64,000 bases of DNA, taken from Macrostomum lignano. Lineage: Eukaryota. Positions 9,736 through 64,000 of the stretch are shown piece by piece. The notes beneath the pieces are model-generated. The model worked only from the letters and a program-made list of their open reading frames with translations. It ran no database searches and was not told the DNA's origin. The first letter of the stretch is position 1. The number at the start of each line of letters is the position of its first letter. The position numbers and the translations under genes are program-made. The DNA lies in NCBI GenBank assembly GCA_002269645.1, contig NIVC01001399.1, positions 186,001 to 250,000 on the forward strand, read 5' to 3'.

Positions 9736-11733
9736 CATATGCATCTTGGCTTTGTATCTGGAGGATGCACTAATTGAGCATCCAGAAGCTGTCAAGGCGG
9801 ATGCTGTTCCATTGGCACCAGATTCCGCTGGCACTGCGTCTACAGCTTCTTCGCCTGCTAAGCCAGGCTCCCAGCTGATTCTGCCTAATCCTCAGCAGGT
9901 TTGTCCGCTCTGCGCACCTTTGTTTTTCGCACCTGAATGCCCCTTGACTAGCTCTCTGCTTCATCTGCCCTCTGCCTCCCCTCTGCCTGTCTTCCCCTCT
10001 GCCTCCCCTCTGCCTGTCTTCCCCTCTGGCCTCTGCCTCCCCTCTGCCTGTCTTCCCATCTGCCCTCTGCCTCCCCTCTGCCTGTCTTCCCCTCTGCCTC
10101 CCCTCTGCCTGTCTTCCCCTCTGCCCTCTGCCTCCCCTCTGGCCTCTGCCTCCCCTCTGCCTGTCTTCCCCTCTGCCCTCTGCCTCCCCTCTGCCTCCCC
10201 TCTGCCTCCCCTCTGCCCTCTGCCTCCCCTCTGCCTCCCCTCTGCCCTCTGCCTCCCCTCTGCCTCCCCTCTGCCCTCTGCCTCCCCTCTGCCTCCCCTC
10301 TGCCCTCTGCCTCCCCTCTGCCTCCCCTCTGCCCTCTGCCTCCCCTCTGCCTCCCCTCTGCCCTCTGCCTGCCCTCTGCCTCCCCTCTGCCTCCCCTCTG
10401 CCCTCTGCCTCCCCTCTGCCTCCCCTCTGCCCTCTGCCTGCCCTCTGCCTCCCCTCTGCCTCCCCTCTGCCCTCTGCCTCCCCTCTGCCTCCCCTCTGCC
10501 CTCTGCCTCCCCTCTGCCTCCCCTCTGCCCTCTGCCTCCCCTCTGCCTCCCCTCTGCCCTCTGCCTCCCCTCTGCCTCCCCTCTGCCCTCTGCCTGCCCT
10601 CTGCCTCCCCTCTGCCTCCCCTCTGCCTGTCTTCCCCTCTGGCCTCTGCCTCCCCTCTGCCTGTCTTCCCCTCTGCCCTCTGCCTCCCCTCTGCCTCCCC
10701 TCTGCCCTCTGCCTCCCCTCTGCCCTCTGCCTCCCCTCTGCCTCCCCTCTGCCTGTCTTCCCCTCTGCCCTCTGCCTCCCCTCTGCCTGTCTTCCCCTCT
10801 GCCCTCTGCCTCCCCTCTGCCTGTCTTCCCCTCTGCCCTCTGCCTCCCCTCTGCCTGTCTTTCCCTCTGCCCTCTGCCTCCCCTCTGCCTGTCTTCCCCT
10901 CTGCCCTCTGCCTCCCCTCTGCCCTCTGCCTCCCCTCTGCCCTCTGCCTGCCCTCTGCCTCCCCTCTGCCTGTCTTCCCCTCTGCCTGCCCTCTGCCTCC
11001 CCTTCCCTCTGCTCTCTGCCTGCCCCCTCTGCCTTCCCTTCTGCCCTCTGCCTGCCCTCTGCCTTCCCCTCTGCCCTCTGCCTGCCCCCTATGCCTTCCC
11101 CTCTGCCCTCTGCCTGCCCCCTATGCCTTCCCCTCTGCCCTCTAACTGCCCTCTTCCTGCCCCTCTGCCTTGCCCTCTACCTGCCCTCCCCCTGCTTCCC
11201 CTCTCCCCTCTCTACCTCTTCCCCCTCTCCTTCTCCCTCTCCCTCTGTCTCTAGCCCTCCCTTTACCTCTCCTGACTCTCCCTCTGCCCCCATCCTTAAC
11301 AGCATTCCCTCTCCTATCTGCCTTCCATATCCTACTGGCCTTACACTTGCCTACCGCTCCCCCCCTGCACCCCCAGGTGCTTCTACCTGGCAATCGCAGC
11401 TGCCTAGCCGTGGGGCCGTGTATTCGTTGCAGCCAATTCGAATCCAGCCTATCAAACGCCAAATTATCATCCTATTGCGTATCTGGCTACAAGCGCCGTG
11501 TCGCGTGCCCCGGCGACAGCGAACAGAAATCTACGCCATCTAGATTCGCCGCCTGTCCATCCAATTTGATACCGACAAAGTCGCAGGCACTGGAGCGCGG
11601 CAAATTCTTTCTATTTCACGCACTGTGCTTTCTAGCGTTGCTTTTATCTGGCGCACTTGTGCAGAGAAGGCAGCGACAGTTAAATCGTAGCTTTGCTGAT
11701 CGGATTAACAAACAGGTGGCTTCTGGTGTTTGA
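9736..11733 (+). CDS. JTB: Jumping translocation breakpoint protein homolog (partial; first exon or exons not identified)
   Basis: Exons 9736..9898 (tag|C...CAG|gt) and 11377..11733 (ccccag|GTG...TGA). Protein has a Cys-rich domain (C..C..C..C.SGY...V.C...C), a TM segment and RRQRQLNRSFADRINKQV, like JTB IRQRQLDRKALEKVRKQI. A possible further exon is 9388..9458 (open frame, AG|gtaaga). Confidence 0.85.
9958..11300. repeat. pyrimidine-rich (CTCTGCC/CTCTGCCTCCC)n minisatellite filling a JTB intron
   Basis: Direct inspection; lies between the donor at 9899 and the acceptor at 11376. Confidence 0.95.
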
Positions 11734-50035: not shown

Positions 50036-52022
50036 ATCCTAGATCCCAGATCCTAGATCCCAGATCCTAGATCCCAGATCCTAGATCCCAGATCCTAGAT
50101 CCCAGATCCTAGATCCCAGATCCTAGATCCCAGATCCTAGATCCCAGATCCTAGATCCCAGATCCTAGATCCCAGATCCTAGATCCCAGATCCTAGATCC
50201 CAGATCCTAGATCCCAGATCCTAGATCCCAGATCCTAGATCCCAGATCCTAGATCCCAGATCCTAGATCCCAGATCCTAGATCCCAGATCCTAGATCCCA
50301 GATCCTAGATCCCAGATCCTAGATCCCAGATCCTAGATCCCAGATCCTAGATCCCAGATCCTAGATCCCAGATCCTAGATCCCAGATCCTAGATCCCAGA
50401 TCCTAGATCCCAGATCCTAGATCCCAGATCCTAGATCCCAGATCCTAGATCCCAGATCCTAGATCCCAGATCCTAGATCCCAGATCCTAGATCCCAGATC
50501 CTAGATCCCAGATCCTAGATCCCAGATCCTAGATCCCAGATCCTAGATCCCAGATCCTAGATCCCAGATCCTAGATCCCAGATCCTAGATCCCAGATCCT
50601 AGATCCCAGATCCAGATCCCAGATCCTAGATCCCAGATCCTAGATCCCAGATCCTAGATCCCAGATCCTAGATCCCAGATCCTAGATCCCAGATCCTAGA
50701 TCCCAGATCCTAGATCCCAGATCCTAGATCCCAGATCCTAGATCCCAGATCCTAGATCCCAGATCCTAGATCCCAGATCCTAGATCCCAGATCCTAGATC
50801 CCAGATCCTAGATCCCAGATCCTAGATCCCAGATCCTAGATCCCAGATCCTAGATCCCAGATCCTAGATCCCAGATCCTAGATCCCAGATCCTAGATCCC
50901 AGATCCTAGATCCCAGATCCTAGATCCCAGATCCTAGATCCCAGATCCTAGATCCCAGATCCTAGATCCCAGATCCTAGATCCCAGATCCTAGATCCCAG
51001 ATCCTAGATCCCAGATCCTAGATCCCAGATCCTAGATCCCAGATCCTAGATCCCAGATCCTAGATCCCAGATCCTAGATCCCAGATCCTAGATCCCAGAT
51101 CCTAGATCCCAGATCCTAGATCCCAGATCCTAGATCCCAGATCCTAGATCCCAGATCCTAGATCCCAGATCCTAGATCCCAGATCCTAGATCCCAGATCC
51201 TAGATCCCAGATCCTAGATCCCAGATCCTAGATCCCAGATCCTAGATCCCAGATCCTAGATCCCAGATCCTAGATCCCAGATCCTAGATCCCAGATCCTA
51301 GATCCCAGATCCTAGATCCCAGATCCTAGATCCCAGATCCTAGATCCCAGATCCTAGATCCCAGATCCTAGATCCCAGATCCTAGATCCCAGATCCTAGA
51401 TCCCAGATCCTAGATCCCAGATCCTAGATCCCAGATCCTAGATCCCAGATCCTAGATCCCAGATCCTAGATCCCAGATCCTAGATCCCAGATCCTAGATC
51501 CCAGATCCTAGATCCCAGATCGTAGATCCCAGATCGTAGATCCCAGATCGTAGATCCCAGATCGTAGATCCCAGATCGTAGATCCCAGATCGTAGATCCC
51601 AGATCCTAGATCCCAGATCGTAGATCCCAGATCCTAGATCCCAGATCCTAGATCCCAGATCCTAGATCCCAGATCCTAGATCCTAGATCCTAGATCCCAG
51701 ATCCTAGATCCCAGATCCTAGATCCCAGATCCTAGATCCCAGATCCTAGATCCCAGATCCTAGATCCCAGATCCTAGATCCCAGATCCTAGATCCCAGAT
51801 CCTAGATCCCAGATCCTAGATCCCAGATCCTAGATCCTAGATCCCAGATCCTAGATCCCAGATCCCAGATCCTAGATCCCAGATCCTAGATCCCAGATCC
51901 TAGATCCCAGATCCTAGATCCCAGATCCTAGATCCCAGATCCTAGATCCCAGATCCCAGATCCTAGATCCCAGATCCTAGATCCCAGATCCTAGATCCCA
52001 GATCCTAGATCCCAGATCCCAG
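50036..52022. repeat. near-perfect (GATCCTAGATCCCA)n array, about 140 copies of a 14-mer built from two 7-mers
   Basis: Direct inspection; variant block GATCGTAGATCCCA at about 51517-51625. Confidence 0.98.
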
Positions 52023-52438
52023 AGGGTGACATTCGGTCAGAATACATGTCAGTAGTAAATTGTAATGTAAGTTACTCTACAAAATGTATGGTACAATTTT
52101 GTTCTCATGCAGTTGTATAAGATTTTTAAAAAGTTTCATTTTTTATTCCTTTTATAAAAGACCTGCTGCCTTTTTACATTTATAATTTCTTCGTTGTAAA
52201 AGTATTGTAAGGCCACGCTAAAAAACTCTCTCAGTGCTGACATAGATTCTCTACTTATGTTCGTACTAATTAATTCATAGGCTTGACCAGCACGTGACAT
52301 AGACATTCACTCTTTCTTTGTTAAATTGTTAGACACGAAATTAAATTTAATCTGTTCTCAAAAGTTGCTCAAATCGTAAAACGCTTTGCAGACTGAATTT
52401 TCTACAATTAATATAGCTTTCAAAAGCTGCTATTTACG

Positions 52439-53299
52439 ATGCCAAACACCGTCAATGTTAGTGTCGAATACTGGTAAGTCATCAGCCTATGTTTTATTTT
52501 TAGAGAGTTTCATTTATCTCAGTATACGTACATGTATATAGATTGTCTTTTTTAGACAGTAAATTTGATTGCGACATTGACTACTAACACGAGGTGCTGT
52601 GATGTCAAGGGTTACTGGGGAATTGCTGAGATGTCAAGGGTTACTGGGGAATTGCTGAGATGCCAAGGGTTACTGGGGGAATTGCTGAGATGCCAAGGGT
52701 TACTGGGGGAATTGCTGAGATGCCAAGGGTTAGTGGGGGAATTGCTGAGATGCCAAGGGTTACTGGGGGAATTGCTGAGATGTCATGGCTTACGGGCGGA
52801 ATTGCTGCGATGTCGAGGGTTACTGGGGGAATTGCTCAGATATATCAAGTATGAGAGGTCAGAAGCTACATGTACATGTAGTTTATTCAAAGTTTCCATA
52901 TACTAAAAGTGGTCTGTCGGTAGGTAGATGTACATTTACATCGCTGCGTAACAACTTCACACATGTACTGCGTAATACAGCAAAATCTCTACTGATCATC
53001 TATAATTCCCCTCCCCCCAACCTTACAGCAGCGTCCAATGAGACTACGAACCCCGCTATGAACACCTGCGCGAAGCAATTCTCAGCGCGTGCCCCAGCGG
53101 GGTTCAGGTATCCGGTGTTGCTGGTCGTCGGGGCGCTTACGAGGTGACAGTCAATGGCCAATTGATTTTCTCTAAGCTGAAGATGCGCTGTTTCCCCGTT
53201 GAGAAACAGGTGATCGACGATGTGAGGAAAGCCACGAATGGTGTGAAGCCTAAGAAGCTGGGATCAGATAGCGGAGGTTGTGGATGTCATCTATTGTAG
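52439..53299 (+). CDS. MIEN1: MIEN1/SelW2-like Rdx-family selenoprotein, copy 1 (101 aa, Sec at UGA 53039..53041)
   Basis: join(52439..52473,53029..53299) gives MPNTVNVSVEYC-SVQ-U-DYEPRYEHLREAIL...GAYEVTVNGQLIFSKLKMRCFP...KATNG...CHLL*. Matches the Rdx/MIEN1 motifs VEYC, FEIEINGQLVFSKL and terminal CaaX; SECIS-like element downstream. Confidence 0.85.
52600..52840. repeat. 30-bp minisatellite (AGGGTTACTGGGGGAATTGCTGAGATGCCA) in the intron of selenoprotein copy 1
   Basis: About 8 copies. Confidence 0.9.
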
Positions 53300-53473
53300 C
53301 GCTATTGGCTTCGTTTTTACTTAATTTTCTTGATTTCTCTCTCATAAACGAAGTCTTTTTTTCAATGAATAAACAGATTTTGATATTTGAAATGTATATT
53401 TCTACTTTAAGTAGACTAAATAGTAGCATAAATTGAATTCAGAAACAAAAACAAATAGAAAAACCAGCGCGTG

Positions 53474-53573
53474 CCCAGACGTATGACGACAGGCCTCGGC
53501 GTTAAAATCCTAATTGGAACCGTCCGCAGCATCGCACCGGATGGGCGCCACCTGTCTGACACACGTATCTGGC
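53474..53573 (+). other. SECIS element (atypical) of selenoprotein copy 1
   Basis: ATGAC...TGAC core; helix GACAGG/CCTGTC plus GGCGT/GCGCC; unpaired AAAA; lower helix CCAGA-CGT/ACG-TA-TCTGG. Confidence 0.75.
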
Positions 53574-54029
53574 TGAGTCTGTGCGCGCGTTGGTTTTTTT
53601 GGTTTCATTTAAACAAAAAAACTGTGAAAAAGTTACGTTTATAAAAGGAGAAAGAAAGAAAATAAGTTGTGGCAGAAAAGTGTCTTAAAAGTAACTTTTG
53701 ATTTATTCGGCATCAAATATACATGTATCTTGAAACATAGTTCATTTTTTTGCTTCGTGCAGTCGCATGCTGCGCTACTTTTAATATCAAGGTTGAATAC
53801 TTTTCTAGCGGCTTTTTTATGAAGGGCTACTTAAAAAAAAGAATAAAAATACTAAATAGTTTGCTTGACTTGTGGACCATTAAAGATATGTACATTATGC
53901 TTAAATTAGAAAAAATATACTATAGTTAGGGCAAGTTAGCTTAAAAATTTGTTAATTAGAAGAAAGTTAAAAGATAACTTTAAAATGGAAGAAAGGGCGC
54001 AGCTGGCACTGTGGCTGAGACGGCTCTGA

Positions 54030-54760
54030 GGGTCCTAAGCTGTCAGTCGAGATGCTCCTGGAGCTCTGCCATCTTGGGCATGAGAGGCTGCCTGTTAGAA
54101 GCAGGAATATTGCGGATCTCGCTCTGGAATTCAAGCGGCAGGCGGCTCCAGAGCGCGTAGACGTAGCTGTCGAGGGTGCAGGCAAGCTCGCCGAGGCGGA
54201 GGAGCTGGCCGGTGGCCAGGTGGAGGGCGTCTGTGAATTCCTTGAGCTCACCCAAGTCGGAGGCAGAGCTGAAGTGAAAGGCGAGGAGACGCTGGAAGGA
54301 GGCGTTCTTTTTCTCCTGCGTGTCGGCGTAGTTGGCCTGGAGGACACGCAGCAGTCCTCCACGTAGGCGCCCGGTTGGCAGGCGTCGAGGGCACCGAGAT
54401 TCTTGAGAGCGGAGCCGGAGAGCAAACCGCGGAGTGCCTCAAATTTGTCGACGTCTTTGAGGCTGGAGCGGTCGACGCGGTAAACGAAGGCATCCCAGAA
54501 GCCCGGAAATGCAGCAGGGTCCGTACCGTCGAAGGTCGGGAGAAGCACGTTCTTGAGAATGGTGGAGCGGATGAGCCCGGTCGGATCGTGGGCATCTGAT
54601 GCGGGCGTTGAGGCAGCTGGTGTCGAGGCTGGACGGACGGTGGCAGCTAGCGAGCTGTTGCATCAGGTGCTGGTTCTGCTGCATCATCGCGGGTCATGGA
54701 GGCGAGGTAAGGCGTTGACGTCAACTCCGGGTTAACAGGAGAGGCGGCAGAGATCGGTCT
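54030..54760 (-). mobile_element. BEL/Pao-type LTR-retrotransposon gag fragment (DUF1759-like), frameshifted
   Basis: LPTFDGTDPAAFPGFWDAFVYRVDRSSLKDVDKFEALRGLLSGSA matches the Pao gag motif LPxFDG...W..F...V...L.D..KF..L...L.G.A. Continues in another frame (LQANYAD...ELKEFTDAL...LWSRLPLE). No pol or LTRs recognised. Confidence 0.75.
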
Positions 54761-54870
54761 GAGCAGCAGGATCGGAGCCATTGCTCCGGCTGAAGAAGCT
54801 GGTGACGGGTCACTGAGGTCAAAGGGCGGTTGCTGATTTCCGTCAAGGCCGCGCGCTCTTTGTACGTTCC

Positions 54871-55140
54871 CAGAGAGCTACATTAAACTATGGTGTCATT
54901 GCCTTCGATGGTATGGCAGAGAGCTACATTAAACTATGGTGTCATTGCCTTCGATGGTTGGCAGAGAGCTACATTAAACTATGGTGTCATTGCCTTCGAT
55001 GGTATGGCAGAGAGCTACATTAAACTATGGTGTCATTGCCTTCGATGGTATGGCAGAGAGCTACATAAACGATGGTATCATGGCCTTCGATGGTATGTCA
55101 GAGAGCTACATTAAACGATGGTATCATGGCCTTTGATGGT
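54871..55140. repeat. 46-bp minisatellite (AGAGAGCTACATTAAACTATGGTGTCATTGCCTTCGATGGTATGGC), about 6 copies
   Basis: Direct inspection. Confidence 0.92.
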
Positions 55141-55764
55141 ATCATTGCAGGCAGCGGAGTTCGATGTTATCACTGTCTTCCTGGGCTAGCTTGTAGCAGC
55201 TGTGCTGAAGAGGGCCCTGTGGAGGCGGTGCCAGCAGGGACGAAAGCGGAGTCTAGACAGAGACGGCAGGAGACACGGCGGCAGCTGCGCGGTGCATCGG
55301 AGAAGTTCGGAGCAGTGCCTCTGGAGAGACAACTGCTCTGGGTAGGGTACTCGTACATCGTAGATTTTAAGATTAGTGCGAGCAGTGTTGCTCTGATGTG
55401 AAGATCTTTGTGGTGATATCTTGACGGGCAGCTGGTTGGCAGTAATATTGCATGGCGACCACACGCAAAAATACAGAAGGAAATACTATTTTTTCAGCTT
55501 ACATGTGTAAATCTGACAGAAACATTTAATTTGCATGTCCTACACCAGCGTTTTTATTAACTCTAGGAATTTTCCATTAAAAGATAACCGTACAAATTTG
55601 ATGGCTAAAGTGTAAAATATGATTATATACTCTTGTCATGCAAAATTATACAGACTGAACTTTAATACATTGTATTCAAATGTCAAAAAATCTTATCAAA
55701 TGTTAAAGCTGTCTGCAGTCTGCTGCATTATGCTTCATCGAGATTGAATTGAGCTGATTTACAC

Positions 55765-56056
55765 CGGCCTAGCTTATGGCCAGATGTGCAACCGACAGCT
55801 CCGCCGCAGCTATTTTGCGGCGCATCTGAAGACTGCGTTCAGTCCAATTAAGGACTGGGGTCGCCACACACCCTGAATTACCCCAGCTAATGCTGGCACC
55901 AATTTTACAGCTGGGTGAACTGAAGCAAATAAATGCAGAGTTTACATGTAAAATATCTTCTTGATCGTGCTGCACACAAAATTGTTCCAGTGGGATCGGG
56001 AATCGAATCCCCAACCTTCAAGTCGTGAGTTTGACGCTCAACCACTGGGCTAAAAC
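55765..56056 (-). mobile_element. tRNA-derived SINE, same family as 19365..19611
   Basis: Shared blocks CAGATGTGCAACCGACAGCTC.GCCGCAGCTA and AGCTAATGCTGGCACCAATTTTACAGCTGGG; head TAGCCCAGTGGTTGAGCGTC...GGATTCGATTCCC on the minus strand. Confidence 0.85.
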
Positions 56057-56423
56057 ATTTTATAATAAATATTTAATTGCCTTAAAAATATAAAAATGAA
56101 TACACCTTTTTTACGCATGCATCTATTACATACAAAACATGTATGCGTTTTTCCTTTACCTTTAACATGCTTTACGCTAACTAAATTTTACATAATGTAG
56201 TAATACAGTTTTCTGACTTTGTTCTGTATTAAAAATGCTTTTGGTTTTTACATTTTGCGGAAACATTTGTTAACTTTTATGTTTGTTTTTATCGCGGTAA
56301 TACAGTTTTTATATAAAATGAATTTTCAGTGCTAAAAAAATAAGGAAACGGCAACGCATCATAATAAAATATTAAATAAACCTTAACATTCTTAGAGACA
56401 GAAGTTACTTTACGTCGTTTACG

Positions 56424-59400
56424 ATGTCGCACCCCGTTACCGTTAGTGTTGAATACTGGTAAGTATCATTTTATTAATACTTTAACAGTTGAACTTGATG
56501 CACTAAAAAGATTAAAACATAGGGGATAGGTGGGTGGGGCTACCTTCTTCTTTAGTAGTACTATATACTAACTTTGATGCCATTGTATCCAAATGTCAAA
56601 TCTGTTGAATCGGTTTTGAATCGATAGAAATCCACTAGGCCTATACTGAAATAGTTAGCTACAAGAATCTGTTAGGCCTAGTTTTTACAATAAATGAATT
56701 TAATTAGCAAACTACGCCTAATTCCATTCTCTCTTGCTGTCCAATTGGTACAAACAGTTTTTATGAGGATAGGCCTAGTATAGAAGCGTTAAAGCTATAC
56801 CCAAAGTTCCAGACCAGTATCAGTCTAATAGGCCAACTATTTTTATATTTGTACATGCATGTGTTTCTATTATAATAAAGTTTGTGGCTATTATTAAGTG
56901 TTTAGGCCTATTTAGAGATGGATAAATAGTCTATTTTTGTATAGGCCCTATATGTAGAGTAATTATTATTAGTGTTGCTTCTCATCTCAACAAAACAAGA
57001 ATATTTTATACAATATTTCTATTGCATTAATTTTGAAGTAAGTTGTATTAATATATTTATATTCTTGAAGGGGTAATTAAGCTAAGTTGGGAATCCTACA
57101 ATGGCCACCAAGTTGTTCCAGGGGGTTCTATCTGGCTATTCACAATCCTACGGCTGTCACCAAATTGTTAAAGGATTTTATTTTTAATTTTAACCTATCC
57201 TGCTGATGCTACAGAACTCTTGAGTATCCTGGAATGAGTTTTATAATTTTAAAGGTTCATGTATAAGCTAGCCATTTAAACCAGTTAGAATTACTAGAAT
57301 TACTAAGTTACGAGGTTAGAACTATGGGCTTTCATGTAAGTACGGATTGCCCTAGTAGCACGTAGTGCCTGAGCAGCAAGACACTGTTTAGCTAAGGGGG
57401 TGACTAAGTCCTAAAAAGCAGTCATCTCCAATGGACCAAGGGTGCCCAGTGAATTCTTGTTTCCTATCTACAGATTTGCTTGTGTCATTCACGACCTGTC
57501 ATTGGTTGTTCGATTCGAAATAGCCACTGGGATAATTCTCCCTTGTCTATTGGCTGATCACGCCTCTGTTCTTTGCGGGTCCGCTTATTGGCTCATAGAC
57601 TGTTAGTCTGATACTCTTGGTAGATTCCACCTTTGCCCAATGAGCAGTCGCTCTCAGCTTTTGACAAATAAAGAAGGCTTGAACACCTCTAATTTTCTTA
57701 GGCAAATCGCCTCTATATTCAGGATCGAGTAAAAAGCTCAGTCGCCTCTTTGGGTGCAAAACTCCCATGTATTTATAATAAGATTGGGGTGGGGGACCAG
57801 ATTCATTTAAACAAAAAATATTTTCCAAGTTATGTTTCCATAGTGACGCAAAAATTTAAATTGGGCCTACATCAATGTTAAGTTTATTTACTTGCTAAGA
57901 ACCATAGTCGGAATAGTTTCCATGCATTTTGGTGCTTAGCATTTTGGTACTCCAGATTGCTTTTTGGTGCTCTAGTTTATGATGCCTAAATAATAATAAA
58001 AAGTAATATAATAGCAAATATAATAAATACTTTACAAAACATTTAGTATTTCTAATGAAAGCTATAATCCAGTAGGCCTATCTATTTTTTTTTCAATTGG
58101 CATGTCTTTTAAATTTTGAAAAATCAGGTCAATTTAATTGTATGCACTTTTCGAATCCTTTATTACAATTATAAGGTTGCACTGCACTTAGCATGCATGC
58201 TAAGAAGAGTTATTTAGGTAAAGATGAAATCTATCAATAATGCTAAATGTAGTTTTGATCAAAATTATGGAATGGCACAAATCTATTCTAGTATTGATTT
58301 CTTGAGTCACATGATTCTGTTTTATTTCTTAAAAAATCAAATTGAAAGAAAAAAATTACATGAAACAAGACCATTTTTTAATTTAAACCCAGGTCAGCTT
58401 AACAAAATGAATACCTAAGTTATTAAATAAATAAGTATTATAAAGCAAAGTGCTTACTGCTAAATAGGGCTCATTTTTTATATTTTTGTGTTAACTATAA
58501 TTTTTAATTTAGGCACCAAAAAGCAAACCGGGGTACCAAAATGTAGGGCAACAAAAAGGGTAGATACCGTCTAGATCATGCTAGGTGCATACCCAAATAA
58601 AACTTGAATAATTACAAATGTATGCCAGAAAATTGAGTGTAGTGAATTAATTTTATAGATAAACAAAGTTTATTTACTTGCTGAGAACCATAGTCTTGAT
58701 CATTCATGCCCTAACAAAAATTAAATATATAAATGTATGCCAAAAAATAGAGTGCACACCTATTCTCAAAACTAAGCTGATTTTGCGACATTAAGTGACC
58801 TTTTTTATATTCTACTTTATAATAACTTTTCTATGATTCTATAAAATATATACCAGGTATGCATGCATACCATTTTCTTAATAGTGATGTACACCAACTG
58901 TACATGCCTACTTTTGGCATGCAAGCAGTGTTGGGCACTATTAATGAAAATCTTAACTTTGTTAATGGCAAAAGCATAGTGTTAAAACAAAAAAATCTTA
59001 ACCTATTCACTTTTAATTTTGTTAAATTAACTAAAATTTAACTGATAATTGTTATTAAGTGTTAATCTGTTAAAGTTACCACAGAAAATACAGAAATCTT
59101 GCAAAACAGACTTCATAATATACTGTCTGCTTTTCTACCTTTTAGCAAAACACTGAGATCATTTAAGGGATTTATAAGCTAAGAAAGTAAAAAATAATAA
59201 TTTAAAAAACTTGTATGTGTAGTAGAGCAGTATTTTAGGAATGGGAATTAGTAGCAAAGCAGATATGCTTTTTGCCTACTGTCAGTAGTTTAGGGTTAGG
59301 AAAGTAATTAGAGCGGGGGAAAAGCGCTAGTTTTTGGGATTCCTTAGAAGTATAGAGCAGTTTGGGGCTTGGGAAGCAGATTTGTTCATGGTTTTGTCTC

Positions 59401-62400
59401 GCATAGAGGCGCCTAACTGCAGTCACTCCTGTGAAACTTGTCTCTGCCTGGCTGAAAGCTTGTAATGAGTGAGTAGGCTGGGTTGGAGGGTAATAGTGGA
59501 TCGGGAAGGGCTGTGGGTAGCTGTTTAGGAAGGCAGGCCTATACCTGTACCAAGGTGCTCTGACGGTATCCCTCAGGCACCCTCTGAACGTATAGCCAGC
59601 GACCCTATTAAAGCTGGAGTGTGCCAGAACCAGGACTGAGTCTGAGCAGGATGGGACCGTTGGCACAGTCACAATAGAAATGGCGGGTTGGCAAAGCAAA
59701 GGGTGAAACAGTCCCGGCGATTAGCCCTCCTGCCGCTTCAAAGATAAGAGACTGTCTGTTGGCAAGAGTACCCGTGGCTTAGTTGGGAGGGAGGCTCCTT
59801 TGGGTTGCCACGGCCGTGGGGGCGGTCAAATGACCGGCATTGGCTTTTCTAACCCATGAGTAGGCACGGGCTTCCCTGATTGGTTCTTTCAACCCCCATG
59901 GGCCTCGGGGAGGTTTATGATTTGTACCCGGGGGTAGAGGGGCGGTCGGCCCCAGCATGGTTGCCACGGCTCTAGGCCTTCGGGCCATCTCTAATAGGCT
60001 ATGGGGGCCTTCTAACCTGGTTTGTGGGCACGGGCTTCCTGACTGGTTCGTCGAACCGCTACTGTCCCCGGGGAGGTTTGGTTTTTTTGATACTGCCCTG
60101 TACAGTCCTCTATAGTCTAACTTGGCTTTTAGTGTACATTAGTACTCTCCCAATTTGGAATCTAAATTATTTCTAGTGGCGTAAGAGCCTTTTTACTTAG
60201 GCTGAGGCGCCGGAAGCACTTATCATAGTCATAGTCATAGGCTTGGGAAGCAGATTCATTCATTCGCAGACTTGCGAAGTCTCAAATTAGTCTCAAATCA
60301 CCGCGAGGCTGTGGTTTTGTCTCGCATAGAGGCGCCTAACTGCAGTACCCCTGTGAAACTTGTCTCTGCCTGGCTGAAAGCTTGTAATGAGTGAGTAGGC
60401 TGGGTTGGAGGGTAATAGTGGATCGGGAAGGGCTGTGGGTAGCTGTATAGGAAGGCAGGCCTATACCTGTTCCAGTTGGTGCTTTGACAGTCTCCTTCAA
60501 GTGCCCTCTGAGCAAACAGCCAGCGACCCTATTATAGCTGGAGTGTGCCAGAACCAGGACTGAGTCTGAGCAGGACGAGACCGTTGGCATGGTCACTATA
60601 GAAATGGTGGGTTGGCGAAGCAAAGGGTGAAATAGTCCCGGCGATTAGCCCTCCTGCCGCTTCAAAGATAAGAGACTGTCTGGCAAGAGTACCCGGGGTT
60701 TAGTTGGGGGGAGGCTCTTTCGGGCTGCCATGGCCGTGGGGGCGGTCATATGACCGGTTTTTGGCTTTTCTAACCCATGGGATTCCTGACTGGTGCGTCC
60801 TTCCACTGTCACTGTCTCCCAGGGAGGTTTTTGATTTGTCAATTGCCCTTTGTACAGTCCTCTTAGCTCCAATTAGGATCTCAGTGTACATAAGTACACT
60901 CCCAACCTGGAATTAATTTATATCTAGTGGTGTAAGAGCCTAATCAATGGCTGAGGCGCCAAATACTTATTACTGTTACTGTTACTGCTTGGGAAGCAGA
61001 TTCGTTCGTTTGCGGACTCGCGAAGTCTCAAATTAGGAAAGGTAAGAGGCAGGAAAAATATTAGGAAATACGTAAAACTGTTAGAGGTAGTCAATGCCAA
61101 CAACAGTACACTACAAGGTAGTCAATGCCTAGCTTTTCCCACAAGTAAAGTAACAATAACCATTGCATGCTGATTTTCTTTTCTTTTTTTGAAATAATAA
61201 AGTTTTGTTAAATATTTTGGTTTTCCTGTGTCACTCCTTATCACTAAATTAATAGAAATAGGGAAGCAGGAAGCCTGGTGGCAGGAAATCTACCAAAATC
61301 TAAAACCAGTAAATCCACTAGTAAAATCCTTAGCAATAGAAAACCAGTAGCCCTAACCGCGAGGTATCACACTTGTCCATATTTATATAATACTACTAAA
61401 ATAAGCATATGGTAAAAAGGTAAGACATAACTCATTTATTTGAAACTTGAAAGCTAATTGATTAATAATAAAATACAAATATAAAGGTTGTTTCAATAGC
61501 ATTAGTAAGTGCAGCAGAAAGTTAAGAAAAAATTGGGAAAGAAGTGAATCAAAGTAATTGATGCTCATGCACAAGCAATAACATAATTTTAATTCATTAT
61601 TAAAGTTCATTAGTAAGAAGTTATTATATTTGCATCATCATTCTTAAAAACAAAAATGTTAAATATGTATTTAGGTAAATTGAAATACATACTGCAATGT
61701 AACTTCTTGCCAGATTTATATTTTTGTTCTTTTTTGCATCCTTGGTCATTGACATTGCCATTAATGTTAAGGGTGAATAAGGGATATTATTAATGCAAAT
61801 TTGTTAATCCATTATTGCAAAAAAATCTTAATGGCAGTCTATTAATGTTAATGAAAAATCTTAGTGCTTATTTATGGATAGATGCTTATTAATGGACTGG
61901 TGCCTAACACTGCATACAAGGCCAATGCACACCTTAATTTTTGGGTGTATACTATATGATCCAGAGTTTGGGCTAAGACTTATGTAAATACTAGTGTCAA
62001 GATCATATATTAGTATAGGCCTAATGTATACCAGAGAAAATTTGCTTATTGACTCTAGCTCATAGCTTATAAGCCATATATGCGCAACTGCTGGCCAACC
62101 TGGCCAATCCAGCCACTGTAAATTATATAAGCTTTGTATTATGAGCTAAGCTAGGTAATAGTCTAGCCTATTGACATAAGAGATCAGGCTGAGTGGGAGC
62201 CAATACAAAAGCAGGGCCACAAAAGCCTTAACATGATCTGGGGCAATAAGGATATAATTTTGATTGGCAAGGATAAGAATTTGATTTGTATACATAGTAC
62301 TTGATATAAAAAATTGTGGTGCAAAAAATAAATGTCTAAACAAATAATTAATTTTTGTTGTATATTTGTATTGATCATTTCATGCAGAACTGGTAACATT

Positions 62401-63248
62401 CTTGAAGTTATTAATTAAAATATCATGTATTAGTAATTGAATTTGTAGTAATGTTCAAAGCCCTACCACACTAGCATATAATGAATTAATTCTATTAGAT
62501 AAGTTTTACAATTAATAATTTTATATCCTAAACATATTGTATTATTTATAAAATGTATAAAAAAATATAATATTGATTACCTTTTAGAATGTTTGAATAT
62601 AGTTTATGAAGTATTGAAATTGTTTTAGAATTATACATTTGCAACACCTGGCCAATCTAGCTAATATAGCCAAGTAATGAGATGCCAAGAAAGGTAGTAA
62701 GTTGCAAAAATGGCCAACCCAAGAAAAAGCAAGGGAAGAAAAGGAAAGAAAGCAAATTAAGAAAAAACAAATATGTGATTGTGACAATCTGCAATCAAAA
62801 GCAATAAGTAATATTAATAGCTTCAAATCATATTTGAAGGGTTGAAGCCAGTCTTTGCTTAGTTAGATGCCGAGGCATTTTACTGGAGAAGCACAGTCAT
62901 AGTCACTCCTGCCGTTTACCCAGTTGCGATTTTTATTGAGCATATATCCTTACTGGTTATCCCAATTTCACCCAATGCAGTGGCAGCGGATGAGGCTACG
63001 AACCCCGCTATGAGCACCTGCGCAGAGCTATTCTCAGCGCGTGCCCCAGCGGGGTTCAGATCTCCGGTCACGATGGTCGCCGGGGCAGCTTCGAGGTGAC
63101 AATCAATGGCCAGCTGATTTTCTCCAAGCTGAAGCTGCACGGCTTTCCTGATGAAAATCAGGTTGTCGAACAGGTGAAGCGAGCTACAAATGGCGACGAT
63201 CCTAACGTACTGGAAGATTCTCAAAGTCCCGGATGTAATCTGCTGTAA
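56424..63248 (+). CDS. MIEN1: MIEN1/SelW2-like Rdx-family selenoprotein, copy 2 (100 aa, Sec at UGA 62991..62993)
   Basis: join(56424..56458,62981..63248) gives MSHPVTVSVEYC-GSG-U-GYEPRYEHLRRAIL...GSFEVTINGQLIFSKLKLHGFPDE...RATNG...CNLL*. Same exon phase and UGA position as copy 1; SECIS-like element downstream. The exon 1 link across a 6.5-kb intron is inferred from homology to copy 1. Confidence 0.85.
59365..61037 (+). repeat. diverged tandem duplication (about 875 bp and about 750 bp units plus the start of a third) with retroposon-like 3' ends
   Basis: Units begin GCTTGGGAAGCAGATT, share long homologous bodies, and end with GG(C/T)GTAAGAGCC-loop-GGCTGAGGCGCC followed by a (TAGTCA)n or (TTACTG)n tail. 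Confidence 0.7.
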
Positions 63249-63420
63249 TGCTGTGCTTCGCTATTAACTTTTCATTTACAATCTCTCCGAAGAGCGTTTT
63301 CTCTTTTTTACAATGAATAAACAAATTTAGACGGTCAAAAACGTATATTTCTACTGTAAGTAGACTAAATAGTAGCATGAATTGAATTTCGTCAAAAACA
63401 AATAGAAAAACCAGCGCGAG

Positions 63421-63510
63421 CCCAGACGTATGACGACAGGCCTCGGCGTTAAAATCCTAATTGGAACCGTCCGCACCAGTACACCGGATGGGCGCCACCT
63501 GTCTGATATT
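63421..63510 (+). other. SECIS element (atypical) of selenoprotein copy 2
   Basis: Identical to the copy 1 element from ATGA (63430) to TGA (63504-06) except for 4 nt in one hairpin loop. Confidence 0.75.
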
Positions 63511-64000
63511 ATTGGCTAAAACTTTGCTTGACATTGTTTGGCTAAGTCTGTGCGCGCGTTGGGTTTTTTGGTTTCATTTATAAACAAAAAATTACATTGA
63601 TATGATTAGAAAGAGAGAAAATCACTTTGTGGCAGAAAAGTGTCTTAAAAGTAATTTTTGATTTATTAAGCGTCAAATATATCCTAAAACATTGTTTTTT
63701 TGCTTTCTGTGCACTCGTATGCTGTGCAACATTTATTCAGGTTGAAAACTTTTTACCCGCGGTATTTTTGGACCGATACAATTAAGCTCTGTGTTTTATT
63801 TAAAGGCCACTTAAATTGAAATATAAAATATAATAAATCAGAATTCTACGAGTGTAAGTTACTCGCCCACTATAAAATCTCTCAATTTTAACTTTATTAA
63901 AGAGTAAAAAGTTTTCGAGTTTTCTAATTTTTACTTTTCACCTATCCAGTGGTCCTAGCAACAGATATGTCCTTTTCTGGCTTCCCTAGCAACAGATATC

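What the first reader, a model, noticed from the sequence alone, without database searches (positions are those of the whole stretch)
53474..53573. Atypical three-way-junction SECIS with an extra hairpin, conserved in both paralogs
Seen: ATGAC core, then helix II of GACAGG/CCTGTC, a 4x1 internal loop (CCTC/A) and GGCGT/GCGCC (11 bp in total). Then come unpaired AAAA, a mini-hairpin TCC-TAATT-GGA, and an additional 7-bp hairpin CCGTCCG/CGGATGG before the 3' strand closes with TGA. Copy 2 (63430-63506) differs only at 4 positions in the 11-nt loop of that extra hairpin, a stems-conserved, loop-free pattern. Known: canonical eukaryotic SECIS has ATGA-N11-12-AA and a simple apical loop or mini-stem. 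Here ATGA to AA is 17 nt and the apex is branched, so pattern-based SECIS finders may miss it.
Basis: partly seen in the sequence, partly recalled or inferred. Interest (0 to 1): 0.8.

Follow-up and report, generated by a model that had tools for sequence, protein, structure and literature searches.

The report
Branched SECIS in flatworm selenoprotein W2
Behind each of two neighbouring selenoprotein W2/MIEN1-like genes of the flatworm Macrostomum lignano sits a conserved RNA hairpin that is very probably the signal for reading UGA as selenocysteine, but it carries a bulge and an extra conserved hairpin that standard SECIS detectors do not accept.

Summary
The window is Macrostomum lignano DNA. 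Both copies lie about 185 nt downstream of the stop codon of two paralogous two-exon genes of the SelW2/MIEN1 (Rdx) family. Each gene has an in-frame TGA at the Sec position. The element has the SECIS core (AUGAC...UGA), an 11-bp helix 2, an unpaired AAAA and a 3-bp mini-stem. It departs from the canon in two ways: a 4x1 internal loop in helix 2, and a 25-nt hairpin inserted before the 3' strand. That gives a predicted three-way junction. The paralogs are old (dS 0.54; CDS 74% and neutral UTR about 55% identical), yet the element is 94-100% identical. All four differences inside it fall in the 11-nt loop of the extra hairpin, so its stem is under selection. Eight relatives from other organisms all have compact canonical SECIS (AUGA-to-AA 11-13 nt, span 37-47 nt, against 17 and 77 nt here). 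Rfam SECIS_1 and my own model miss the element, and published SECISearch filters reject Y-shaped candidates. Best reading: a functional SECIS of a derived, branched architecture, a new variant of a known kind. Function, the junction itself and covariation remain untested.

The parts
52439..52473 (+). Copy 1, exon 1 coding part: ATG..GAATAC TG|gtaagt (MPNTVNVSVEY + first two bases of Cys)
   Evidence: Only conserved block upstream of both copies. Sequence read. The spliced ORF translates to a 100-aa SelW2-like protein.
53032..53299 (+). Copy 1, exon 2 coding part (after the cagcag| acceptor): C-VQ-U-DYEPRYEHL...GCGCHLL, stop TAG 53297-99
   Evidence: Pfam Rdx PF10262, E = 1.6e-15. The family is named MIEN1 / selenoprotein W2a by its sources.
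53039..53041 (+). In-frame TGA = selenocysteine codon of the CxxU motif (YCVQU)
   Evidence: It aligns with the position that relatives read as TGA. Their gene calls print W there, and the tool reports 'translates_to_query: no'.
53459..53480 (+). 5' strand of the conserved outer helix (extended helix 1): AAAAACCAGCGCGTGCCCAGAC
   Evidence: Pairs with 53577-98 in the MFE/centroid. 95% identical between paralogs, while the stretch between SECIS and 3' strand is 24% identical.
53483..53487 (+). SECIS core, 5' side: AUGA + C (quartet UGAC)
   Evidence: Matches the UGAN consensus, followed by G at position 1 (PMC2647825).
53488..53502 (+). Helix 2, 5' strand: GACAGG, bulged CCUC (53494-97), GGCGU
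   Evidence: pair probabilities 0.93-1.0.
53503..53507 (+). Unpaired U-AAAA = the AAR motif
   Evidence: Unpaired in the MFE of both copies. 100% conserved.
53508..53518 (+). Mini-hairpin UCC-UAAUU-GGA, at the position of the canonical type II helix 3
   Evidence: It matches the 3-bp helix 3 with a short loop in the Rfam SECIS_1 consensus structure printed.
53520..53544 (+). Extra hairpin: 7-bp stem CCGUCCG/CGGAUGG with an 11-nt loop (53527-37). The loop holds all 4 paralog differences.
   Evidence: It contributes about -14.7 kcal/mol.
53545..53556 (+). Helix 2, 3' strand: GCGCC-A-CCUGUC (12 nt)
   Evidence: The homeolog L006 has C->U at 53552, changing G-C to G-U.
53557..53560 (+). SECIS core, 3' side: U-GA-C (copy 2: U-GA-U)
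   Evidence: The KGAW consensus is met in copy 2. In copy 1 the W position is C.
53561..53576 (+). Variable 3' side of internal loop 1. Copy 2 has a 22-nt longer version that can form its own hairpin.
53577..53598 (+). 3' strand of the conserved outer helix: GUCUGUGCGCGCGUUGGUUUUU
56424..56458 (+). Copy 2, exon 1 coding part (MSHPVTVSVEY + TG), followed by a 6.5-kb intron
   Evidence: Identical in homeolog loci.
62981..63248 (+). Copy 2, exon 2 coding part (acceptor at 62980 or 62986). Sec TGA 62991-93, stop TAA 63246-48.
   Evidence: The protein equals NCBI PAA64976.1-like P0002.
63406..63568 (+). Copy 2 of the whole element: outer helix 63406-27 / 63546-68; AUGA..GA 63430-63506; extra-hairpin loop 63474-84

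Best explanation
The element is the functional SECIS of two paralogous M. lignano SelW2/MIEN1-like selenoprotein mRNAs.

Shown: each gene has an in-frame UGA at the Sec position of the CxxU redox motif, and the coding sequence after it is under purifying selection. The only SECIS-like structure downstream is this hairpin. It lies about 445 nt after the UGA and about 185 nt after the stop codon.

Inferred mechanism: the AUGA/GA sheared pairs form the kink-turn-like core that recruits the SECIS-binding protein (SBP2 or SBP2L) and eEFSec/Sec-tRNA. Helix 2 sets the unpaired AAAA at the usual helical distance. It has 11 Watson-Crick or GU pairs plus a C.A layer, which makes 12 nt on the 3' strand. 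The three surplus 5'-strand nucleotides bulge out.

The apex is a derived elaboration of a type II SECIS. The canonical 3-bp helix 3 (UCC/GGA) is kept right after AAAA. A 25-nt hairpin has been inserted between it and the 3' strand of helix 2, which gives a three-way junction. The inserted 7-bp stem probably stacks coaxially on helix 2, since the 3' strand is continuous. Its stem is selectively maintained and its loop is free. A conserved 22-layer outer helix clamps the base.
For: Gene context:
- The Rdx domain is present.
- Exon 1 and exon 2 splice to MPNTVNVSVEYCVQU....
- The family is named MIEN1 / selenoprotein W2a.
- Relatives carry TGA at the same position.
- dN/dS is 0.44 and dS is 0.54 downstream of the TGA.
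- TGA and SECIS are kept in three homeologous loci.

Core and geometry:
- AUGAC / UGA(C/U), G-C as the first helix 2 pair, unpaired AAAA and a 3-bp helix 3.
- These features match PMC2647825 and the Rfam consensus shown.
- In-silico removal of the 25-nt hairpin leaves a canonical type II fold.

Selection:
- The element is 94-100% identical, against 74% for the CDS and 55% for the adjacent UTR.
- Both strands of the outer helix are 95% identical, while the segment between them is 24% identical with a 22-nt indel.
- All 4 internal differences fall in the 11-nt loop (P = 2.4e-4).
- The one polymorphism in a stem is G-C to G-U.

Uniqueness:
- No other candidate turns up in the window or downstream, by descriptor, Rfam or my own CM.
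- Chance expectation is 0.17 per window.
Against: - Neither Rfam SECIS_1 (no hit at E <= 10 even on a 91-nt slice) nor a CM built from six relatives (2.4 bits, misaligned) recognises it. These models are weak, though. SECIS_1 hits only 4 of 9 relatives, and my CM misses the canonical L008.
- It breaks several published SECIS rules: spacing 17 nt against 10-13; 37 nt after AAAA against 6-23; a 4-nt unpaired run in helix 2; a Y shape.
- There are no compensatory changes in any helix. The sequences available are too similar, or in the case of the relatives, not alignable.
- A conserved AAUAAA (53367) lies upstream of the element. If that were the only poly(A) signal, the SECIS would be absent from the mRNA. 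The next AAUAAA is at 53842 (copy 1) and about 63831 (copy 2).
- I could reach no transcript, 75Se, SBP2-binding or probing data.
Confidence: 0.8

Rival explanations
1. It is a functional SECIS, but the extra hairpin is a tolerated expansion segment with no role of its own. Its stem is conserved only because an unfolded 25-nt insert would disrupt the apex. The active part is an ordinary type II SECIS.
For: Deleting the hairpin in silico leaves a canonical type II fold. All eight relatives do without it. Its loop evolves freely. Latreche et al. found the apical region a minor determinant of efficiency in human SECIS (PMC2761289).
Against: The insert has persisted unchanged in stem sequence through a duplication with dS 0.54. 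Under 'must merely fold' one would expect some compensatory stem changes, and none is seen in 7 bp. With only two lineages this is weak evidence.
Confidence: 0.35
2. It is a functional SECIS without a true three-way junction. The 7-bp hairpin is helix 3 with its apical loop, stacked on helix 2. U-AAAA-UCCUAAUUGGAA is then a 17-nt single-stranded, sequence-constrained internal loop 2, and the UCC/GGA pairing does not form in vivo.
For: The variable 11-nt loop behaves like a type II apical loop, whereas the whole 17-nt stretch, including the 'mini-hairpin loop' UAAUU, is 100% conserved. The 3' strand runs continuously from CGGAUGG into GCGCC. A 3-bp stem is marginal.
Against: The nearest-neighbour model favours the junction by 3.6 kcal/mol, with pair probabilities 0.87-0.99. 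AAAA followed directly by a 3-bp stem with a short loop is exactly the canonical type II layout.
Confidence: 0.2
3. It is not a SECIS. It is a conserved structured 3'-UTR element with another role (stability, localisation, small-RNA precursor). The similarity between copies is due to gene conversion, and the real recoding signal lies elsewhere or the genes are not translated past UGA.
For: Two covariance models fail to score it. There is no covariation. A conserved AAUAAA lies upstream. Other conserved UTR blocks without obvious structure flank it.
Against: AUGA/GA flanks an 11-bp helix topped by an unpaired A-run, exactly where a Sec-TGA gene needs a SECIS. There is no alternative candidate. 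The CDS after the UGA is under constraint and keeps the invariant family residues and the CaaX Cys. A conversion tract cannot explain near-neutral divergence confined to the loop between two identical stem strands, nor the 24%-identical segment between two 95%-identical helix strands.
Confidence: 0.06
4. It is a box C/D-type kink-turn small RNA (C box AUGACGA, D box CUGA, terminal stem ACGU/ACGU) hosted in the UTR.
For: AUGACGA differs from RUGAUGA by one base, and CUGA is exact. SECIS and C/D cores are both bound by L7Ae-family proteins (established knowledge).
Against: The interior is fully base-paired from the first nucleotide after the boxes, leaving no guide region and no C'/D' boxes. There is no snoRNA family hit at this position. 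The terminal ACGU/ACGU stem is absent in copy 2.
Confidence: 0.01

Closest known systems
Eukaryotic type II SECIS element (Rfam RF00031 SECIS_1; Walczak/Krol and Grundner-Culemann models)
   Same: 3'-UTR location behind a Sec-UGA gene. AUGA...GA quartet, with G-C as the first pair of helix 2. A helix 2 of about 15-16 layers including the quartet. An unpaired A-run followed at once by a 3-bp helix 3 with a short loop. A basal helix 1.
   Different: A 4x1 internal loop in helix 2, so AUGA-to-AA is 17 nt instead of 10-13. A 25-nt conserved hairpin between helix 3 and the 3' strand, giving a predicted three-way junction. AUGA..GA spans 77 nt. The W of KGAW is C in copy 1. It is not scored by SECIS_1.
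SECIS elements of SelW2/MIEN1-like mRNAs from other organisms (loci L007-L009, L011-L015)
   Same: Same protein family (41-49% identity), same Sec position, same core. L013 even shares AUGACGAC and has a long-range helix 1.
   Different: All eight are compact type I or II elements: AUGA-to-AA 11-13 nt, span 37-47 nt, no branch. The M. lignano form is therefore derived.
'Y-shaped' candidates rejected by SECISearch
   Same: Same predicted topology: a stem that forks above helix 2.
   Different: In the pipelines these are treated as false positives and filtered out (PMC1802603, PMC3753652). Here the forked element is the only candidate behind a homology-supported selenoprotein gene, and it is under selection.
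Accessory 3'-UTR structures near SECIS elements (e.g. the stem-loops described next to the SelS SECIS; from my own knowledge, not checked here)
   Same: Extra conserved RNA structure associated with a SECIS.
   Different: Those lie outside the SECIS hairpin. Here the extra hairpin is inside the apex.
Box C/D kink-turn
   Same: Tandem sheared G.A core with AUGA(C)GA / CUGA-like boxes.
   Different: No guide region, a fully paired interior, and mRNA 3'-UTR context.

Membership tests
Eukaryotic SECIS element | Lies in the 3' UTR of an mRNA with an in-frame UGA at the Sec position of a selenoprotein family, more than about 51-111 nt from the UGA | tested here: met
   TGA at 53039-41 and 62991-93 in CxxU-family genes. 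The element lies about 445 nt downstream and 185 nt after the stop. UTR extent is inferred from conservation and the next AAUAAA. No transcript data.
Eukaryotic SECIS element | Quartet UGAN/KGAW with an unpaired A 5' of it (AUGA ... GA) | tested here: met
   AUGAC / UGAC in copy 1 (W position is C) and AUGAC / UGAU in copy 2. The invariant UGA/GA is present.
Eukaryotic SECIS element | Fixed spacing between the quartet and the unpaired AA: 10-13 nt on the 5' strand (SECISearch), or helix 2 of 11-16 bp (SECISaln) / 14-15 bp (human) | tested here: inconclusive
   17 nt on the 5' strand fails the 10-13 rule (PMC1802603). Counted in layers (quartet 4 + 6 + C.A + 5 = 15-16; 12 nt on the 3' strand), it falls at the top of the 11-16 range (PMC2647825, PMC2761289). 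The counting convention is assumed to include the quartet.
Eukaryotic SECIS element | Unpaired AAR (or CC) at the top of helix 2 | tested here: met
   U-AAAA (53503-07) is unpaired in the MFE of both copies.
Eukaryotic SECIS element | Apex is a simple loop (type I) or one mini-stem (type II); apical part 6-23 nt; not Y-shaped; no more than 2 consecutive unpaired nt in helix 2 | tested here: not met
   37 nt follow AAAA. Two hairpins are predicted. The CCUC run is unpaired. Rules quoted from PMC1802603 and PMC3753652.
Eukaryotic SECIS element | Helix 1 below internal loop 1 | tested here: met
   ACGU/ACGU in copy 1, and a conserved 22-layer outer helix in both copies.
Eukaryotic SECIS element | Scores with a SECIS covariance model (Rfam RF00031 gathering score 35 bits) | tested here: not met
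   No hit at gathering, nor at E <= 10 on 601-nt, 4-kb and 91-nt slices. My own CM R2 gives 2.4 bits. Control: SECIS_1 reaches 36.7, 27.3, 24.0 and 23.8 bits in 4 of 9 relatives and misses the rest. Failure is therefore weak evidence.
Eukaryotic SECIS element | Helices supported by covariation | tested here: inconclusive
   Only two paralogs and near-identical homeologs were available. There is one G-C to G-U change and no double changes. The support is the conservation pattern.
Eukaryotic SECIS element | Binds SBP2 and directs Sec insertion at UGA | not testable with these tools
   Needs a reporter assay, 75Se labelling and a binding assay.
SelW2 / Rdx12 / MIEN1 protein family | Rdx thioredoxin-like domain (PF10262) | tested here: met
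   E = 1.6e-15 and 1.3e-15. The profile search returns proteins named MIEN1 and selenoprotein W2a.
SelW2 / Rdx12 / MIEN1 protein family | N-terminal CxxU/CxxC redox motif | tested here: inconclusive
   Copy 1 gives YCVQU with the distal AG of a CAGCAG tandem acceptor. Copy 2 has GG at that acceptor, and the available AGs give CGU or CGSGU. Splice sites are inferred, not observed.
SelW2 / Rdx12 / MIEN1 protein family | C-terminal CaaX prenylation box | tested here: met
   CHLL and CNLL. This Cys is invariant in the alignment of 16 family members.
Box C/D snoRNA | C (RUGAUGA) and D (CUGA) boxes with a terminal stem, an unpaired guide region and C'/D' boxes | tested here: not met
   The boxes are approximated, but the interior is fully paired. 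No Rfam snoRNA hit here.

The most novel reading that the evidence does not exclude
The three-way junction really forms and the extra hairpin is required for selenocysteine insertion in Macrostomum, for example as a contact for a lineage-specific SECIS-binding protein domain or a second factor. That would make it the first documented branched ('type III') eukaryotic SECIS. It would imply that Y-shape filters have been hiding selenoprotein genes in flatworms and perhaps elsewhere.
Probability: 0.25. Interest if true: 0.65.

Novelty: new variant of a known kind. Interest (0 to 1): 0.45.

Why it matters
SECIS elements are defined operationally by a narrow structural template, and the prediction tools enforce it. 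Those tools in turn define which genes are called selenoproteins.

Here a homology-supported selenoprotein gene pair has as its only SECIS candidate a structure that breaks three of those rules: the spacing, the apical length and the ban on Y shapes. The element is nevertheless under clear purifying selection.

If it is active, three things follow:
- It widens the accepted SECIS architecture.
- It gives a natural test case for what the apex and the AAR motif actually do, since an extra helix sits next to the AAR motif.
- It warns that selenoproteomes of flatworms and other poorly sampled lineages may be under-counted.

M. lignano is transgenic-tractable, so the test is feasible.

Tried and rejected
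- Rfam: the whole window at gathering, then four permissive searches around both genes and on a 91-nt slice. No SECIS_1 hit.
- Looked for transcripts or close orthologues by exact-protein look-up of the post-UGA ORFs. Nothing on record. The word-indexed protein search found only the M. lignano cluster itself.
- Homeologous loci of assembly GCA_002269645.1 (L001-L006) are 98-100% identical in the element and give no covariation.
- A two-sequence CM (R1) was too sequence-specific.
- A plain MAFFT alignment of the relatives' SECIS was unusable, so I forced a hand alignment by N-padding to build R2. R2 finds its training set and L009 but misses canonical L008 and the M. lignano elements. It is therefore a weak test.
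- I first read L009 as an intermediate with a long internal loop and a 7-bp helix 3. The CM hit and a constrained fold show a shorter canonical element instead, so I dropped that idea.
- The loose descriptor alone is not specific: 5.8 hits per shuffled window. It discriminates only with an energy threshold.
- The ORF at 53967-54548(-) looked like a retroelement gag by eye but has no Pfam hit.
- The search for related loci with the broad alignment failed for lack of a conserved stretch. The narrower one mostly returned bacterial SelW-like genes.
- Literature searches for branched, type III or three-way-junction SECIS found no description, only the Y-shape filters.

Full report
**What is there.**
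- ATGAC starts at 53483.
- GACAGG (53488-93) pairs with CCTGTC (53551-56).
- CCTC (53494-97) lies opposite A53550.
- GGCGT (53498-502) pairs with GCGCC (53545-49).
- T-AAAA occupies 53503-07.
- The mini-hairpin is TCC-TAATT-GGA (53508-18).
- The hairpin CCGTCCG/CGGATGG (53520-44) has an 11-nt loop.
- The closing TGA is at 53557-59.

Copy 2 (63430-63506) differs inside ATGA..GA only at 53529 and 53532-34, all in that loop, plus the base after GA. RNAfold returns this three-way-junction structure as the minimum-energy fold for both copies. The z-scores are about -4.5. Pair probabilities are 0.87-0.99 for the 3-bp mini-stem and about 1.0 for the 7-bp stem. The junction is 3.6 kcal/mol better than the same fold without the mini-stem.

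This helix is present in both copies.

**Where it is.** The window is Macrostomum lignano DNA. The copy 2 protein equals an NCBI M. lignano entry, and loci from assembly GCA_002269645.1 are 95-99.96% identical to the window.

Both elements lie in the presumed 3' UTR of two paralogous genes. A short conserved block upstream of each copy is a first exon ending in TG|gtaagt. Spliced to the distal AG of a CAGCAG acceptor, copy 1 reads MPNTVNVSVEYCVQU-DYEPRYEHL...GCGCHLL. It is 100 aa long, with the TGA at 53039-41.

The protein has an Rdx domain (PF10262, E = 1.6e-15). An exhaustive HMMER search and a profile search place it in the family that sources name 'migration and invasion enhancer 1' and 'selenoprotein W2a'. 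The alignment shows an invariant C-terminal CaaX cysteine. Relatives carry TGA at the same position. Their gene calls print W there, and the tool reports that they do not translate under table 11.

UniProt already labels a fused copy1+copy2 model 'Selenoprotein W'. The genes are therefore known in outline. I found no description of the SECIS.

**Is it under selection or merely young?** The duplication is old: dS = 0.54, dN = 0.24, dN/dS = 0.44. Identity by segment is as follows.

| Segment | Identity between paralogs |
|---|---|
| CDS | 74% |
| UTR just after the stop | 55% |
| AUGA..GA body | 94% |
| 53484-53528 (within the body) | 100% |
| Each strand of the outer helix | 95% |
| Stretch between SECIS and outer 3' strand | 24%, with a 22-nt indel |

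A gene-conversion tract would be contiguous. It cannot leave a near-neutral segment between two conserved helix strands. Nor can it confine all four internal differences to the 11-nt loop that lies between two identical stem strands (P = 2.4e-4). The only stem polymorphism among homeologs changes G-C to G-U.

So the stems are constrained, including that of the extra hairpin, and its loop is not. There are no double compensatory changes. The structure rests on thermodynamics plus this conservation pattern.

**Is it a SECIS?**

*For.*
- The gene needs one.
- The element has the invariant AUGA/GA core, with G-C as the first helix 2 pair.
- It has an unpaired A-run followed directly by a 3-bp stem with a short loop. 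That is the layout of the Rfam type II consensus (PMC2647825).
- It has a basal helix.
- Nothing else in the window or within 3 kb downstream qualifies, by a relaxed descriptor, Rfam or my own model.
- A descriptor hit this stable is expected 0.17 times per shuffled window.

*Against.*
- Rfam SECIS_1 does not score it, even on a 91-nt slice at E <= 10.
- A covariance model I built from six relatives gives 2.4 bits with a wrong alignment.
- The controls show these models are blunt. SECIS_1 reaches 36.7, 27.3, 24.0 and 23.8 bits in four of nine relatives' transcripts and misses the rest. My model misses the canonical L008.
- A conserved AAUAAA at 53367 precedes the element. The next ones are at 53842 and about 63831. 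Transcript ends are needed to settle this.

**How atypical is it?** I fetched eight transcripts of relatives (41-49% protein identity; Logan and JGI assemblies, organisms unknown). All have compact canonical SECIS elements.

| Measure | Eight relatives | M. lignano |
|---|---|---|
| AUGA-to-AA spacing | 11-13 nt | 17 nt |
| AUGA..GA span | 37-47 nt | 77 nt |

The closest relative, L013, even begins AUGACGAC like the M. lignano element, but it has a plain 14-nt apex. The branched form is therefore derived within the family.

Published SECISearch rules require the following (PMC1802603, PMC3753652):
- 10-13 nt between the quartet and AA;
- an apical part of 6-23 nt;
- no run of more than 2 unpaired nucleotides;
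- exclusion of 'Y-shaped' candidates.

This element violates all of these.

One qualification. The 17-nt spacing comes from three bulged nucleotides. On the 3' strand, helix 2 has 12 nt, which is 15-16 layers with the quartet. That sits at the upper edge of the reported 11-16 bp range and 1-2 layers above the human 14-15 bp (PMC2647825, PMC2761289). The helical distance from the core to AAAA is thus nearly canonical.

**Mechanism (inferred).**
- The kink-turn-like core recruits the SECIS-binding protein and eEFSec/Sec-tRNA.
- Helix 2 presents AAAA at the usual distance.
- The canonical helix 3 is retained.
- The inserted 7-bp hairpin probably stacks on helix 2 through the continuous 3' strand.
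- The outer helix stabilises the base.

Two sub-questions stay open:
- Does the extra hairpin have a function of its own, or is it a tolerated expansion that must simply stay folded?
- Does the 3-bp mini-stem form in vivo? If not, the topology is a type II SECIS with a 17-nt internal loop and a 7-bp helix 3. The complete conservation of the 17-nt stretch against the free 11-nt loop fits that alternative as well.

**Verdict.** The interpretation (an atypical, probably branched SECIS conserved in both paralogs) is supported as far as sequence analysis can go.

| Claim | Confidence |
|---|---|
| It is the functional SECIS | about 0.8 |
| The three-way junction forms | about 0.6 |
| The extra hairpin is functionally required | about 0.25 |

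It is a new structural variant of a known element, not a new kind of system. Its interest is moderate. It matters mainly for the definition of SECIS architecture and for selenoprotein gene finding in under-sampled lineages.

Noticed in passing
window 62975-62993 (also L004-L006 around 9985-10000): In copy 2, the splice acceptor that would give the canonical CxxU spacing is GG instead of AG. The two usable AGs give C-G-U or C-G-S-G-U. This is identical in three homeologous loci, so it is not an assembly error. Copy 1 has a CAGCAG tandem acceptor (CxxU or CxxxU). A selenoprotein W2 with a CxU or CxxxU motif would be unusual.
   Followed up: partly
window 53285-53296 and 63234-63245: Both proteins end in a CaaX box (CHLL, CNLL; X = L suggests geranylgeranylation), as in vertebrate MIEN1 (CVIL). 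This Cys is invariant across 16 aligned family members. These would be prenylated selenoproteins.
   Followed up: partly
window 53364-53372 and 63312-63320: A conserved CAATGAATAAACA block with AAUAAA lies about 70 nt after the stop and about 90 nt upstream of the SECIS outer helix, in an otherwise poorly conserved UTR stretch. If it is used as a poly(A) signal, it would give a SECIS-less isoform (possible regulation by alternative polyadenylation).
   Followed up: no
window 53394-53438 and 53666-53705 (copy 2: 63343-63387 and 63627-63666): Two further 3'-UTR blocks are 90-97% identical between the paralogs: GTATATTTCTACTTTAAGTAGACTAAATAGTAGCAT and TTGTGGCAGAAAAGTGTCTTAAAAGTAAC. No consistent stable fold was found in both copies. 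Function unknown.
   Followed up: partly
window 53561-53576 versus 63508-63545: The 3' side of internal loop 1 is the only fast-evolving part of the element. Copy 2 has 22 extra nt that can form their own hairpin (UUGGCUAAA...UUUGGCUAA).
   Followed up: no
window 50036-52023: A 14-bp satellite (ATCCTAGATCCCAG x 142.6, 98% matches) ends about 400 bp upstream of copy 1's start codon.
   Followed up: no
window 52595-52841 and 54871-55142: A 30-bp tandem repeat (8.3 copies) lies inside the intron of copy 1. A 46-bp tandem repeat (6 copies) lies 1.3 kb downstream of copy 1.
   Followed up: no
window 53042-63245 (UniProt A0A1I8HGK5, P0003): The public 397-aa 'Selenoprotein W' model of M. lignano fuses the last exons of copy 1 and copy 2 through antisense, non-genic sequence. 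It is a mis-prediction caused by the unrecognised Sec codons.
   Followed up: yes
window 55998-56052 (-): A weak tRNA-like match (21.7 bits, below the gathering score of 29) lies just upstream of copy 2's first exon. It may be a tRNA-derived repeat fragment.
   Followed up: no
window 59388-59858 versus 60312-60779: The 6.5-kb intron of copy 2 contains internal repeats about 91% identical to each other. It also differs in length between homeologous contigs.
   Followed up: no
loci L007-L015: Rfam SECIS_1 detects only 4 of 9 SelW2-type transcripts at E < 1, and only 1 at its gathering score. Yet eight of them have hand-verifiable canonical SECIS elements, so the family model has low sensitivity here. 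L010's SECIS was not located.
   Followed up: partly
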